The position numbers and the translations under genes were made by a program. From Octopus sinensis (Eukaryota): a stretch of DNA of 64,000 nt. The notes beneath the pieces were generated by a model. It worked only from the letters and a program-made list of their open reading frames with translations. It was not told where the DNA came from and did not search any database. The number at the start of each line of letters is the position of its first letter. Within the stretch, counting starts at the first letter, position 1. The stretch lies in NCBI RefSeq assembly GCF_006345805.1, contig NC_043019.1, forward strand, positions 1,302,001-1,366,000. Reading direction: 5' to 3'. This document shows, piece after piece, positions 45,643 through 49,294 of this stretch.

Positions 45643-45850
45643 TATATATATATATATATATTATATAAAAGGGTTTAGTAAAATAAATTACTTTGCCGCA
45701 TACTAAACTCATTAGAAATAGCAGCTAAAAAACTTTTTTAAAGCTATTTCTAATACTTAAAGAAAATCTCTCTCATATATAGTGTTTGCTTAATTCAACT
45801 CACAAAAGTTTGGGGGTAAGGACATCGAAAAATCAAATGCTAAGGTTATT

Positions 45851-45902
45851 TGAGAACGTACGTTTCAAGATTAGTCAAAACAACACTTCTATCATCAGCT
45901 CA
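45851..45902 (-). ncRNA. Minimal type I hammerhead ribozyme, array copy 1
   Basis: TGAG-CTGATGA-helix II-GAA-ACGTACGT-T-CTCA. Confidence 0.75.
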
Positions 45903-46394
45903 GAAATTCCTTGGTTTGGATTTGGAAACACTGAAAATAAGAACATACCCTTTCGAAGATCTGCTCGTAACTAACAGTGCCAACAAATTCAAATAAGCAA
46001 GCGAAGAATCTCTGTTCTCCCCTTTCCACCAGCGTGGGTTAAAATCATCAAACACTATGCTTATTTCGGTAAAATCCGAAGCATTAATCAGAGGGAGATT
46101 AATTATAATTTCAACAATTGAGGGCAAAATTAATTAATTATTAATCAATTTCACCAAGTGTTCAGTATGCAAAGGGACCATTCAAGGCGAATTCAAATTA
46201 TTACATTATATAAAAGGGCTTAGTAAAATAAATTACTTTGCCGCATACTAAACTCATTAGAAATAGCAGCTAAAAAACTTTTTTAAAGCTATTTCTAATA
46301 CTTAAGAAAATCCTCTCTCATATATAGTGTTTGCTTAATTCAACTCACAAAAGTTTGGGGGTAAGGACATCGAAAAATCAATGCTAAGGTTATT

Positions 46395-46447
46395 TGAAGA
46401 ACGTACGTTTCAAGATTAGTCAAAACAACACTTCTATCATCAGCTCA
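46395..46447 (-). ncRNA. Minimal type I hammerhead ribozyme, array copy 2
   Basis: As copy 1; 1-nt insertion in helix I (possible sequencing error). Confidence 0.6.
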
Positions 46448-46936
46448 GAAATTCCTTTTTGCATTTGGAAACACTGAAAATAAGAACATACCCTTTCGAA
46501 GATCTTCTCGTAACTAACAGTGCCAACAATTCAAATAAGCAGCGAAGAATCTCTGTTCTCCCCTTTCCACCAGCGTGGGTTAAAATCATCAAACACTATG
46601 CTTATTTCTCGGTAAAAATCCGAAGCATTAATCAGAGGGAGATTAATTATAATTTCAACAATTGAGGGCAAAATTAATTAATTATTAATCAATTTCACCA
46701 AGTGTTCAGTATGCAAAGGGACCATTCAAGGCGAATTCAAATATTACATTATATAAAAGGGCTTAGTAAAATAATTACTTTGCCGCATACTAAACTCATT
46801 AGAAATCGCAGCTAAAAAACTTTTTTAAAGCTATTTCAATACTTAAAGAAAATCTCTCTCATATATAGTGTTTGCTTAATTCAACTCACAAAAGTTTGGG
46901 GGTAAGGACATCGAAAAATCAAATGCTAAGGTTATT

Positions 46937-46987
46937 TGAGAACGTACGTTTCAAGATAGTCAAAACAACACTTCTATCATCAGCTCA
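46937..46987 (-). ncRNA. Minimal type I hammerhead ribozyme, array copy 3
   Basis: As copy 1; 1-nt deletion in the helix II bulge. Confidence 0.7.
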
Positions 46988-47831
46988 GAAATTCCTTGGT
47001 TTGGATTTGGAAACACTGAAAATAAGAACATACCTTTCGAAGATCTGCTCGTAACTAACAGTGCCAACAAATCAAATAAGCAAGCGAGAATCTCTGTTCT
47101 CCCCTTTCCACCAGGTGGGTTAAAATCATTCAACACTATGCTTATTTCGGTAAAATCCGAAGCATTAATCAGAGGGAGATTAATTATAATTTCAACCATG
47201 TGAGGGCAAAATTAATTAATTATTAATCAATTTCACCAAGTGTTCATTTGCAAAGGGACCATTAAGCAAACACTATATATGAAGAGAATTTTCTTTAAGT
47301 ATTAGAAATAGCTTTAAAAAAGTTTTTTAGCTGCTATTTCTAATGAGTTTAGTATGCGCAAGTAATTTATTTTACTAAGCCTTTTATATAATGTAAAATT
47401 TTGAATTCGCCTTGAATGGTCCCTTTGCATACTAACACTTGGTGAAATTGATTAAAAGTTTTTTAAGCTGCTATTTCTAATGAGTTTAGTATGCGGCAAA
47501 GTAATTTATTTTACTAAGCCCTTTTATATAATGTAATAATTTGAATTCGCCTTGAATGGTCCCTTTGCATACTGAACACTTGGTGAAATTGATTAATAAT
47601 TAATTAATTTTGCCCTCAATTGTTGAAATTATAATTAATCTCCCTCTGATTAATGCTTCGGATTTTACCGAAATAAGCATAGTGTTTGATGATTTTAACC
47701 CACGCTGGTGGAAAGGGGAGAACAGAGATTCTTCGCTGCTTTATTGAATTTGTTGGCACTGTTAGTTACGAGCAGATCTTCGAAAGGTATGTTCTTATTT
47801 TCAGTGTTTCCAATCCAAACCAAGGAATTTC

Positions 47832-47882
47832 TGAGCTGATGATAGAAGTGTTGTTTTGACTATCTTGAAACGTACGTTCTCA
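47832..47882 (+). ncRNA. Minimal type I hammerhead ribozyme, array copy 4
   Basis: As copy 3, on the opposite strand. Confidence 0.7.
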
Positions 47883-48373
47883 AATAACCTTAGCATTTGA
47901 TTTTTCGATGTCCTTACCCCCAAACTTTTGTGAGTTGAATTAAGCAAACACTATATATGAGAGAGATTTTCTTTAAGTATTAGAAATAGCTTTAAAAAAG
48001 TTTTTTAGCTGCTATTTCTAATGAGTTTAGTATGCGGCAAAGTATTTATTTTACTAAGCCCTTTTATATAATGTAATAATTTGAATTCGCCTTGAATGGT
48101 CCCTTTGCATACTGAACACTTGGTGAAATTGATTAATAATTAATTAATTTTGCCCTCAATTGTTGAAATTATAATTAATCTCCCTCTGATTAATGCTTCG
48201 GATTTTACCGAAATAAGCATAGTGTTTGATGATTTTAACCCACGCTGGTGGAAAGGGAGAGACAGAGATTCTTCGCTTGCTTATTTGAATTTGTTGGCAC
48301 TGTTAGTTACGAGCAGATCTTCGAAAGGGTATGTTCTTATTTTCATGTTTCCAAATCCAAACCAAGGAATTTC

Positions 48374-48425
48374 TGAGCTGATGATAGAAGTGTTGTTTTG
48401 ACTAATCTTGAAACGTACGTTCTCA
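48374..48425 (+). ncRNA. Minimal type I hammerhead ribozyme, array copy 5
   Basis: TGAG CTGATGA TAGAAGTGTTGTTTTGACTAATCTT GAA ACGTACGT T CTCA; predicted cleavage 3' of 48421. Confidence 0.75.
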
Positions 48426-48918
48426 AATAACCTTAGCATTTGATTTTTCGATGTCCTTACCCCCAAACTTTTGTGAGTTGAATTAAGCAAACACTATATA
48501 TGAGAGAGATTTTCTTTAAGTATTAGAAATAGCTTTAAAAAAGTTTTTTAGCTGCTATTTCTAATGAGTTTAGTATGCGGCAAAGTAATTTATTTTACTA
48601 AGCCCTTTTATATAATGTAATAATTTGAATTCGCCTTGAATGGTCCCTTTGCATACTGAACACTTGGTGAATTGATTAATAATTAATTAATTTTGCCCTC
48701 AATTGTTGAAATTATAATTAATCTCCCTCTGATTAATGCTTCGGATTTTACCGAAATAAGCATAGTGTTTGATGATTTTAACCCACGCTGGTGGAAAGGG
48801 GAGAACAGAGATTCTTCTTCGCTTGCTTATTTGAATTGTTGGCACTGTTAGTTACGAGCAGATCTTCGAAAGGGTATGTCTTATTTTCAGTGTTTCCAAA
48901 TCCAAACCAAGGAATTTC

Positions 48919-48970
48919 TGAGCTGATGATAGAAGTGTTGTTTTGACTAATCTTGAAACGTACGTTCTCA
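48919..48970 (+). ncRNA. Minimal type I hammerhead ribozyme, array copy 6
   Basis: Identical to copy 5, 545 nt downstream. Confidence 0.75.
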
Positions 48971-49254
48971 AATAACCTTAGCATTTGATTTTTCGATGTC
49001 CTTACCCCCAAACTTTTGTGAGTTGAATTAAGCAAACACTATATATGAGAGAGATTTTCTTTAAGTATTAGAAATAGCTTTAAAAAAGTTTTTTAGCTGC
49101 TATTTCTAATGAGTTTAGTATGCGGCAAAGTAATTTATTTTACTAAGCCCTTTTATATAATGTAATAATTTGAATTCGCCTTGAATGGTCCCTTTGCATA
49201 CTGAACACTTGGTGAAATTGATTAATAATTAATTAATTTTGCCCTCAATTGTTG

Positions 49255-49294
<40 letters not shown>

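What the first reader, a model, noticed from the sequence alone, without database searches (positions are those of the whole stretch)
45661..49262. Hammerhead-ribozyme tandem array: candidate cephalopod retrozyme / circular-RNA element
Seen: ~545-bp units (HHR-to-HHR spacing 542-545 nt) with no credible ORF. Each unit carries TGAG-CUGAUGA-helix II-GAA-ACGUACGU-U/CUCA, with a 4-bp helix I, a palindromic helix III (ACGTACGT) and a GUU cleavage triplet, plus a 12-bp hairpin (ATTAGAAATAGC/GCTATTTCTAAT, e.g. 48522-48565). There are six HHR copies and the array sits in a (TA)n tract. Established: minimal type I HHRs with palindromic helix III are typical of Penelope-like elements and cleave as dimers. 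Non-coding tandem repeats with one HHR per unit (newt satellite 2, schistosome SMalpha, animal non-LTR retrozymes) yield monomeric and circular RNAs. Inference: this is a non-autonomous ribozyme retroelement whose multimeric transcripts self-process into ~545-nt monomers or circles and are copied by a Penelope RT, remnants of which occur in this window. I do not know of a description of this family and cannot search for one.
Basis: partly seen in the sequence, partly recalled or inferred. Interest (0 to 1): 0.92.

Follow-up and report, generated by a model that had tools for sequence, protein, structure and literature searches.

The report
Octopus hammerhead-ribozyme repeat, inverted double array
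A non-coding ~544-bp repeat carrying a minimal hammerhead-ribozyme motif sits in a (TA)n microsatellite as two head-to-head arrays, which makes it a probable cephalopod example of the already described Penelope-dependent "retrozyme" class, not a new kind of element.

Summary
The repeat is real, but it is not one tandem array. There are 3.0 units on the minus strand (45660-47263) and 3.3 units plus a partial unit on the plus strand (47264-49262). The 5' ends of the two arms meet at 47261-47263, and both 3' ends run into (TA)n.

Each unit carries a complete hammerhead core in type I order, with a 4-bp helix I, the palindrome ACGUACGU as helix III, and a GUU cleavage site. This matches the published minimal hammerhead of Penelope-like elements (PLEs). 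My descriptor expects 0.007 chance hits per 64 kb.

Three results weaken the ribozyme claim. No Rfam hammerhead model matches. The monomer fold is not stable. Helix II starts with U·U instead of G-C.

Tandem plus inverted 5'-truncated copies in an AT-rich microsatellite is the documented PLE insertion signature. The locus also meets the operational definition of an animal non-LTR retrozyme.

No RT or GIY-YIG remnant was found in the window. No relatives could be retrieved from outside it. Cleavage, circular RNA and mobilisation remain untested.

Verdict: a new member of a known kind, of moderate interest.

The parts
45641..45660 (.). Left (TA)n target remnant. It abuts the 3' end of the minus-strand arm.
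   Evidence: Sequence read. Further (TA)n at 45171-45256 is separated from it by an unrelated 389-bp repeat.
45661..47263 (-). Left arm: 3.0 units of the ~544-bp repeat, with the hammerhead strand on minus. In RNA sense its 3' end is at 45661 (unit position ~199) and its 5'-truncated end is at 47263 (unit position 219).
   Evidence: TRF period 541, 3.0 copies, 96% matches.
45851..45902 (-). Hammerhead-like motif, intact: TGAG-CTGATGA-helix II-GAA-ACGTACGT-T|CTCA.
46395..46447 (-). Hammerhead-like motif with a 1-nt insertion after the cleavage site (CTTCA for CTCA). Helix I is broken, so it fails the descriptor.
46937..46987 (-). Hammerhead-like motif of the innermost left unit. One A is missing from the helix II bulge.
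47261..47263 (.). Centre junction where the 5' ends of the two arms meet. The overlap is 3 nt (ATT).
   Evidence: unit 219-545 maps to 47263-46941 (minus) and unit 62-271 maps to 47261-47466 (plus).
47264..47466 (+). Partial plus-strand unit (unit positions ~64-263). It is followed by a jump back to unit position ~118, which gives a 140-bp direct duplication (47318-47596) that lacks the hammerhead.
   Evidence: (TRF period 140, 2.0 copies).
47454..49262 (+). Right arm: 3.3 units with the hammerhead strand on plus. Its 3' end at 49262 (unit position 297) runs into (TA)n.
   Evidence: TRF period 545, 3.3 copies, 98% matches.
47832..47882 (+). Hammerhead-like motif of the innermost right unit, with the same missing A in the helix II bulge as 46937-46987.
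48374..48425 (+). Hammerhead-like motif, intact. The predicted cleavage is 3' of 48421.
48919..48970 (+). Hammerhead-like motif, intact. The predicted cleavage is 3' of 48966.
48522..48565 (.). 44-nt hairpin: a 12-bp outer stem plus an inner A6/U6 stem, at unit positions 101-144. Further copies lie at 45711-45754, 46256-46299, 46798-46837 (2 changes), 47301-47344, 47979-48022 and 49067-49110.
   Evidence: (coordinates from the chance CRISPR-DR50 hairpin matches).
49259..49290 (.). Right (TA)n target remnant.
12188..12280 (+). Diverged (~68%) 5'-truncated relative of the unit, covering the hairpin to position ~200. It lies inside another (TA)n and ends within a few nt of the left arm's 3' terminus.
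   Evidence: (nhmmer E=0.005), (alignment A4).

Best explanation
The locus is one multimeric insertion, or a very young array, of a non-coding ~544-nt retroelement that carries a PLE-type minimal type I hammerhead. In the literature's terms it is an animal non-LTR retrozyme, that is, a non-autonomous PLE derivative.

Proposed mechanism:
1. A multimeric RNA serves as template. This is either a read-through transcript of a donor array or a monomer circle made by hammerhead cleavage and ligation.
2. A PLE RT/GIY-YIG protein supplied in trans cuts an AT-rich (TA)n target on both strands and extends both nicks.
3. This produces two cDNA arms whose RNA-sense 3' ends lie at the two target junctions (unit positions ~199 and 297, both A/U-rich and internal to the unit).
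4. The 5' ends are joined in the middle with microhomology and one template jump.

Shown here: the anatomy, the motif, the target, the junctions and the lack of coding capacity.
Inferred: transcription, dimer-mode self-cleavage at GUU|C, circularisation, and the identity of the mobilising enzyme.
For: Motif:
- Every conserved core position is present (C3 U4 G5 A6 N7 G8 A9, G12 A13 A14, A15.1-U16.1, H17=U). The order is type I and helix I is 4 bp.
- There is an unpaired nucleotide between A9 and helix II, and helix III is the 8-nt palindrome ACGUACGU. These are the traits listed for PLE minimal hammerheads in PMC4209133.
- My descriptor finds 5 of the 6 copies, against 0.007 expected per 64 kb.
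- A U·U at the base of helix II has a precedent in the axolotl retrozyme HHR_Amex2 (PMC7229834).

Architecture:
- PLE insertions are partial tandems with an adjacent inverted 5'-truncated copy and a microsatellite bias, including (TA)n (PMC8557442).
- A purified PLE protein cleaves and extends both target strands, prefers AT-rich DNA, and starts reverse transcription inside the RNA near a stem-loop ~90 nt 3' of the hammerhead cut (PMC11167929).
- Here both 3' ends face (TA)n and the 5' ends meet with a 3-nt overlap.
- A hairpin lies 101-144 nt 3' of the cut.
- An independent diverged copy at 12188-12280 ends at the same unit position as the left arm.
- The immediate flanks of the array are not inverted repeats, and the arms are not mirror images.
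- Three other head-to-head pairs of minimal-hammerhead or related short elements lie next to TA-rich tracts in the window.

Operational retrozyme definition (10.64898/2026.07.22.740005):
- TRF array, at least 2 consecutive units with a complete minimal or canonical type I hammerhead, and hammerhead MFE below -5 kcal/mol. All are met.
- Unit length and copy number fall in the published ranges of 51-972 bp and mostly <=7 units.
- GC is 33%.

Other:
- Units are 97-99% identical.
- Putatively active PLE families are annotated in Octopus vulgaris (PMC13282606).
Against: - No Rfam hammerhead model scores, even at E<=10 in a 111-nt search.
- The hammerhead fold of the monomer evaluates at +0.6 kcal/mol. 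The local MFE is a different fold and is no better than shuffles (z=+1.08). The homodimer is also no better than shuffles.
- The G10.1-C11.1 pair, highly conserved in PLE minimal hammerheads, is replaced by U·U.
- Published metazoan minimal hammerheads cleave poorly in vitro, and one needed its protein. In that system cleavage was dispensable for insertion.
- No RT or EN remnant lies within 64 kb.
- No relatives could be retrieved outside the window, so copy number, an autonomous partner and conservation are unknown.
- The excess self-pairing of the unit is equal on both strands (z=-3.4 and -3.0). It therefore reflects DNA-level inverted repeats and is not evidence for a selected RNA strand.
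- The two innermost units share three private variants. This fits DNA-level copying or gene conversion at the palindrome centre at least as well as two independent cDNAs.
- A TSD cannot be read in (TA)n.
Confidence: 0.62

Rival explanations
1. The ~544-bp unit is simply the pseudo-LTR / terminal non-coding region of an autonomous PLE that exists elsewhere in the genome. On this reading the locus is a stack of 5'-truncated PLE tails, not an independent non-autonomous family.
For: In PLEs the hammerhead lies in the pLTR, and insertions are heavily 5'-truncated, tandem and inverted. Xenopus retrozyme consensuses match PLE termini. The AUG inside CUGAUGA opens only a 6-codon frame here, as expected if an ORF that once began at the hammerhead, as in the Anolis element, has been lost.
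Against: Each unit is a complete head-to-tail repeat from cleavage site to cleavage site, with no trace of an ORF between hammerheads. No RT or EN remnant lies within 64 kb. The two readings differ only in whether a full-length parent exists, which these tools cannot test.
Confidence: 0.2
2. This is an ordinary tandem repeat or palindrome built by DNA-level processes at a fragile (TA)n tract: unequal exchange, fold-back replication and gene conversion. The hammerhead-like motif is an inactive relic or plays no part.
For: (TA)n is itself palindromic. The two innermost units share three private variants, and divergence is highest near the centre. A second palindrome at 61218-62324 includes its non-element flanks, so DNA-level inverted duplication does occur in this region. 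The hammerhead is thermodynamically weak and unrecognised by Rfam.
Against: The arms end at different unit positions, have different copy numbers and carry private variants. The flanks are unique. A diverged 5'-truncated copy shares the 3' terminus. The motif is far beyond chance and recurs in other families in the window. This rival explains how the array grew but not how the unit reached two separate (TA)n tracts.
Confidence: 0.12
3. The head-to-head arrangement is an assembly artefact, from fold-back or missed-adapter long reads or from mis-joining of two arrays. The real locus would be a single array.
For: Most differences between units are single-base indels in short homopolymer runs, which is typical of unpolished long-read sequence. 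PLE tandem/inverted structures are known to trouble assemblies.
Against: The arms are asymmetric: 3.0 versus 3.3 units, different termini, and a 140-bp duplication on one side only. Both outer flanks are unique sequence. Inverted pairs recur at three other hammerhead loci in the window.
Confidence: 0.05

Closest known systems
Animal non-LTR retrozymes (Cervera & de la Pena 2020, PMC7229834; Li, Clavereau & Pollet 2026 preprint 10.64898/2026.07.22.740005)
   Same: Non-coding, low-GC tandem repeats with one type I hammerhead per unit and only on one polarity. There are no LTR, PBS or PPT features. They co-occur with PLEs in the host lineage. Unit length and copy number are within the published ranges. 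The palindromic helix III implies dimer-mode cleavage, as in newt and axolotl repeats.
   Different: The hammerhead is the minimal PLE-type variant. It lacks recognisable loop 1 / loop 2 tertiary contacts, has a 4-bp helix I and a U·U at the base of helix II. The canonical, efficiently cleaving type I motif of coral and mussel retrozymes is not present. The unit (544 nt) is longer than the 170-400 nt invertebrate circles described in 2020. The locus is two inverted arrays. Expression and circularity are untested. The host is a cephalopod, a group not covered in those papers.
Pseudo-LTRs and insertion structures of EN+ Penelope-like elements (Cervera & de la Pena 2014, PMC4209133; Craig et al. 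2021, PMC8557442; Frangieh et al. 2024, PMC11167929)
   Same: A minimal hammerhead with an extra nucleotide after A9 and a palindromic helix III. Partial tandems plus an adjacent inverted 5'-truncated copy. An AT-rich or microsatellite target. 3' junctions internal to the repeat and downstream of a stem-loop. Two alternative 3' termini.
   Different: There is no RT/GIY-YIG ORF between the repeats or anywhere in the window. The two termini differ by ~98 nt, whereas the PLE 'tail' is 30-40 bp. G10.1-C11.1 is not kept.
Newt satellite 2 and Schistosoma SMalpha hammerhead repeats
   Same: Tandem or dispersed short non-coding repeats with a type I hammerhead whose weak helix III has a palindromic loop.
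   Different: Those carry canonical helices I and II with loop-loop contacts and are matched by the Rfam type I model. This motif is not. SMalpha is SINE-like, not (TA)n-targeted.

Membership tests
Hammerhead ribozyme, type I (catalytic core) | Conserved core C3 U4 G5 A6 N7 G8 A9 / G12 A13 A14 / A15.1-U16.1 / H17, in the order helix I - core - helix II - GAA - helix III - cleavage site - helix I | tested here: met
   All positions are present in all six copies. H17 = U and the triplet is GUU.
Hammerhead ribozyme, type I (catalytic core) | Recognised by the curated Rfam hammerhead covariance models | tested here: not met
   No hammerhead hit at gathering score, at E<=10 over 4.1 kb, or in a 111-nt search.
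Hammerhead ribozyme, type I (catalytic core) | Mg2+-dependent self-cleavage at H17 | not testable with these tools
   This needs in vitro transcription of monomer and dimer constructs. The computed hammerhead fold of the monomer is +0.6 kcal/mol, and neither monomer nor dimer beats shuffles.
PLE-type minimal hammerhead (Cervera & de la Pena 2014) | [quoted passage not shown] | tested here: met
   UGAG/CUCA is 4 bp. It is followed by an internal loop and a possible distal AAGG/CCUU stem.
PLE-type minimal hammerhead (Cervera & de la Pena 2014) | An unpaired nucleotide between A9 and 10.1 | tested here: met
   The sequence reads CUGAUGA-U-AGA.... The feature is listed.
PLE-type minimal hammerhead (Cervera & de la Pena 2014) | Highly conserved G10.1-C11.1 pair | tested here: not met
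   The base of helix II is U·U followed by A-U, G-C, A-U. A U·U base is reported for axolotl HHR_Amex2.
PLE-type minimal hammerhead (Cervera & de la Pena 2014) | Palindromic 15.2-16.2 / loop 3, allowing a dimeric helix III | tested here: met
   ACGUACGU is a perfect 8-nt palindrome in all six copies.
PLE-type minimal hammerhead (Cervera & de la Pena 2014) | Family-wide covariation in the helices | not testable with these tools
   The six copies are near-identical, and no relatives that retain the hammerhead were retrievable.
Animal non-LTR retrozyme (operational definition of Li et al. 2026) | Tandem repeat detected by TRF (2 7 7 80 10 50 1000) | tested here: met
   Two arrays, 3.0 x 541 and 3.3 x 545.
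Animal non-LTR retrozyme (operational definition of Li et al. 2026) | At least two consecutive units, each with a complete canonical or minimal type I hammerhead whose MFE is below -5 kcal/mol | tested here: met
   There are three consecutive complete motifs in the right arm. The MFE of the 67-nt segment is -6.6 kcal/mol, although that MFE is not the hammerhead fold.
Animal non-LTR retrozyme (Cervera & de la Pena 2020) | Non-coding, low GC (<45-50%), no LTR/PBS/PPT | tested here: met
   GC is 33%. There is no consistent ORF. The units are plain head-to-tail repeats.
Animal non-LTR retrozyme (Cervera & de la Pena 2020) | Expressed as monomeric linear and circular RNAs | not testable with these tools
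   No transcriptome or read data are available here.
Animal non-LTR retrozyme (Cervera & de la Pena 2020) | Highly self-paired RNA | tested here: inconclusive
   The unit folds better than shuffles (z=-3.4), but so does its complement (z=-3.0). Only 64% of bases are paired, against 61% in random sequence.
Penelope-like element (autonomous) | ORF with a telomerase-like RT and a GIY-YIG endonuclease between pLTRs | tested here: not met
   No RVT or GIY-YIG Pfam hit in any of 351 stop-free stretches of >=55 aa across the window.
Penelope-like element (insertion signature) | Partial tandem plus an adjacent inverted 5'-truncated copy, and an AT-rich or microsatellite target | tested here: met
   for the structure, for (TA)n, and for the published signature.

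The most novel reading that the evidence does not exclude
This is an active cephalopod retrozyme family built on a PLE-type minimal hammerhead instead of a canonical one. Its ~544-nt RNA is circularised and copied by rolling-circle reverse transcription primed from both strands of a cut (TA)n tract. Initiation would occur at fixed internal A/U-rich sites (unit positions ~199 and ~297) downstream of a 44-nt hairpin that serves as the RT-binding element. If so, this one locus would be a natural record of the both-strand, internally initiated integration so far seen only in vitro for an Anolis PLE.
Probability: 0.2. Interest if true: 0.6.

Novelty: new member of a known kind. Interest (0 to 1): 0.4.

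Why it matters
If the family is confirmed genome-wide, it would extend hammerhead-bearing non-autonomous retroelements to cephalopods. In the library searched, octopus repeat annotations list PLEs but no ribozyme elements.

The locus would also be a compact natural test case for three open points about PLE-type integration: whether both target strands prime cDNA synthesis in vivo, where on the RNA synthesis starts, and whether minimal hammerheads that barely cleave in vitro still delimit unit-length RNAs.

It does not open a new category. The class, its tandem organisation and its proposed dependence on PLEs are already published.

Tried and rejected
Searches that found nothing:
- Rfam at gathering score and at E<=10 gave no hammerhead. 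The only hits were chance matches of the hairpin to CRISPR-DR50, of (TA)n to miRNAs, and of UGAUGA/CUGA to C/D snoRNAs.
- The hammerhead pattern in viral and metagenome contigs, and a hairpin/3'-module pattern in metagenome contigs, gave 0 matches.
- Using the longest spurious ORF of the unit to fish for other copies among 5.8 billion predicted proteins gave no candidate.
- I did not scan genome contigs, because that collection holds only bacteria and archaea.
- The Pfam screen of all stop-free stretches of >=55 aa found no PLE RT or EN.

Ideas I withdrew or rejected:
- Strand-specific RNA structure. I first read the circular-fold energies (-132 versus -105 kcal/mol) as support for a selected hammerhead strand. 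Proper dinucleotide shuffles give equal z-scores for both strands, so I withdrew this.
- A larger palindrome including the flanks. I rejected this for the array, because the only flank matches are dispersed 425-bp SINE-like copies. It does hold for the separate locus at 61218-62324.
- The 389-bp repeat next to the array as part of the element. I rejected this. It is an independent family with its own copies at 11300-11686 and 28932-29053, and it has no similarity to the unit.
- A possible further relative at 44659-44680 rests on a 22-nt match only (E=0.1). I do not rely on it.
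Full report
**What is there**

Between two (TA)n remnants (45641-45660 and 49259-49290) lies 3.6 kb made of one ~544-bp unit. 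It is not one.

Repeat finding, a unit alignment and BLAST of the consensus show two arms:
- A left arm, 45661-47263, in which the unit lies on the minus strand (3.0 copies).
- A right arm, 47264-49262, on the plus strand. It has a partial unit followed by 3.3 copies.

TRF run with the parameters used in the retrozyme literature returns exactly these two arrays: 45660-47263 (period 541) and 47454-49262 (period 545).

In the sense of the hammerhead strand, the arms are head-to-head. Their 5'-truncated ends meet at 47261-47263 with a 3-nt overlap. Their 3' ends run into (TA)n at different unit positions, ~199 on the left and 297 on the right. Next to the centre, the right arm has a jump from unit position ~263 back to ~118, which produces a 140-bp duplication.

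Units are 97-99% identical. Most differences are single-base indels private to one unit. The two innermost units alone share three variants. There is no ATG-initiated ORF, and reading frames are not kept between units.

**The ribozyme motif**

Six copies of TGAG-CTGATGA-(24-25 nt)-GAA-ACGTACGT-T|CTCA are present, three per strand. Spacing between cleavage sites is 541-545 nt.

Features consistent with a minimal PLE-type hammerhead:
- All conserved core positions are present, in type I order.
- Helix I is 4 bp.
- One unpaired U follows A9.
- Helix III plus its loop is a perfect 8-nt palindrome.
- The cleavage triplet is GUU.

These are the traits Cervera and de la Pena listed for the minimal hammerheads of Penelope-like elements: a short helix I, an extra nucleotide between 9 and 10.1, and a palindromic 15.2-16.2/loop 3 (PMC4209133). 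A descriptor I wrote along those lines finds five of the six copies. The sixth has a 1-nt insertion in helix I. The descriptor expects 0.007 hits per 64 kb of composition-matched random sequence.

Several results count against a working ribozyme:
- The conserved G10.1-C11.1 pair is replaced by U·U. A U·U base is known in one axolotl retrozyme hammerhead.
- No Rfam hammerhead model scores, even in a 111-nt search at E<=10.
- The monomer's hammerhead fold evaluates at +0.6 kcal/mol.
- Neither the local MFE (z=+1.08) nor the homodimer beats shuffles.

This weakness is typical of published metazoan minimal hammerheads. They cleave poorly in vitro and, in one case, only with the element's protein. 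Even so, catalytic competence here is an inference.

**Other features of the unit**

A 44-nt hairpin (a 12-bp outer stem plus an A6/U6 inner stem) lies 101-144 nt 3' of the predicted cut in every unit.

The whole unit folds better than dinucleotide shuffles, but equally on both strands (z=-3.4 and -3.0). This reflects DNA-level inverted repeats. It is not evidence for selection on one RNA strand, and I withdrew an earlier reading to that effect.

**Context in the window**

- The window is from an octopod-like genome. The only RT-related coding remnant, 7596-8402 minus, is a LINE-type zf-RVT C-terminus. Its best named relative is an Octopus bimaculoides protein at 75% identity.
- None of 351 stop-free stretches of >=55 aa hits an RT or GIY-YIG domain. 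The claimed Penelope RT remnants were therefore not found.
- The window does contain further minimal-hammerhead motifs of other sequence families: 31005-31036, 12847-12906, and a head-to-head pair at 61812-61846 / 61902-61935.
- Short related elements form head-to-head pairs beside TA-rich tracts at 12812-13211, 51027-51214 and 61697-62115.
- A diverged (~68%) 5'-truncated relative of the 544-nt unit lies in another (TA)n at 12188-12280. It keeps the hairpin and passes into (TA)n within a few nucleotides of the left arm's terminus.
- The array's own flanks are unique, apart from dispersed SINE-like copies.

**How it most likely arose and works**

The published PLE insertion signature has three parts: a partial tandem, an adjacent inverted 5'-truncated copy, and a bias for microsatellites including (TA)n (PMC8557442). 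Biochemistry of an Anolis PLE adds four points (PMC11167929):
- The protein cleaves AT-rich DNA on both strands.
- It extends both nicks.
- Reverse transcription starts inside the RNA near a stem-loop ~90 nt downstream of the hammerhead cut.
- Alternative start sites explain the 'tail' seen at one end of genomic copies.

The locus fits this point for point, but with an ORF-less unit. My best explanation (0.62) is a multimeric RNA of a non-autonomous hammerhead element, copied from both nicks of a cut (TA)n tract by a PLE enzyme supplied in trans, with the two cDNAs joined in the middle.

Whether the template was a read-through multimer or a rolling circle made by hammerhead cleavage and ligation cannot be told from this sequence. 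I put circles at roughly one in three.

**Rivals**

- The unit is simply the pLTR of an autonomous PLE present elsewhere (0.2).
- The structure grew by DNA-level palindrome or satellite formation at a fragile (TA)n (0.12). This is supported by the shared variants of the innermost units and by a flank-inclusive palindrome at 61218-62324.
- The inverted arrangement is an assembly artefact (0.05).

**Comparison with what is known**

The class is described. Animal non-LTR retrozymes, including in a mussel, were reported in 2020, with PLEs proposed as the mobilising partner (PMC7229834). A 2026 preprint argues they derive from PLE pLTRs and gives an operational definition. This locus meets that definition.

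It differs in four ways:
- It carries the minimal hammerhead, not the canonical one.
- The unit is longer than the invertebrate circles first described.
- It is arranged as two inverted arrays.
- The host is a cephalopod.

Searches of the held literature found PLE annotations for octopus, including putatively active families, but no hammerhead or retrozyme report.

**Limits**

No tool here searches eukaryotic genomes or transcriptomes. Scans of viral and metagenome contigs and of the protein collection found nothing. Copy number, the autonomous partner, conservation, expression, cleavage and circularity are all open.

**Verdict**

This is a new member of a known kind, with interest 0.4.

Noticed in passing
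window 61218-62324: A ~1.1-kb palindrome. Inverted non-element flanks (61218-61350 / 62193-62324, 95-98%) enclose (TA)n tracts of very unequal length and a head-to-head pair of a different minimal-hammerhead element: CCAC-CTGAAGA-TTGTC..GACAA-GAA-ACAATTGT-A-GTGG at 61812-61846 (minus) and 61902-61935 (plus). The right arm extends ~85 nt further than the left. Here, unlike at the 544-bp array, the inverted repeat includes flanking DNA.
   Followed up: partly
window 12812-13211 and 51027-51214: Two more head-to-head pairs of a related ACAATTGT-palindrome hammerhead family. Each arm ends in ...TTATTTTGAT next to (TA)n or TA-rich sequence. The two loci also share their right-hand flank (13212-13300 resembles 51217-51300), so the pair may be part of a larger repeated unit.
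   Followed up: partly
window 31005-31036 (+), within palindrome 30857-31118: A minimal hammerhead motif with the canonical extra A and G10.1-C11.1 (CTGAAGA-A-GGG..CCC-GAA-ATATAT-A), sitting inside a 65%-self-complementary 260-bp stretch.
   Followed up: no
window 44362-44388 (+) and 44659-44680 (-): A weak descriptor hit (CTGACGA..GAA-ACGT-T) lies ~1.3 kb upstream of the array. A 22-nt match to unit positions 22-42 abuts the (TA)n at 44498-44658. These may be older relatives, but the evidence is thin.
   Followed up: partly
window 45257-45645, 11300-11686, 28932-29053: A separate 389-bp repeat family (92.8% between the two full copies) ending ...GGGCGATACTGCTAG and inserted in (TA)n. One copy lies immediately left of the array and another ~500 bp left of the diverged unit fragment at 12188. 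It has no similarity to the 544-bp unit.
   Followed up: partly
window 43451-43875 (+), 50085-50499 (-), 53250-53678 (-): Three copies (87-93%) of a ~425-bp dispersed repeat. Its 5' part looks tRNA-derived by eye (e.g. 50090-50165), but ARAGORN calls no tRNA in the window. It is probably an octopus SINE.
   Followed up: no
window 7596-8402 (-): A 269-aa stop-free stretch that is the C-terminal zf-RVT part of a LINE-type reverse transcriptase. It has hundreds of relatives in marine invertebrates. The best named one is from Octopus bimaculoides (75% identity).
   Followed up: yes
window 46941-47263 and 47456-47878: The two innermost units of the opposite arms share three variants found in no other unit: loss of one A in the helix II bulge, loss of one G in GAAAGGG, and one A-to-T. 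Sequence divergence is highest next to the centre. No explanation so far accounts for this cleanly. Candidates are a common template unit, gene conversion between close inverted repeats, and assembly behaviour at the palindrome centre.
   Followed up: partly
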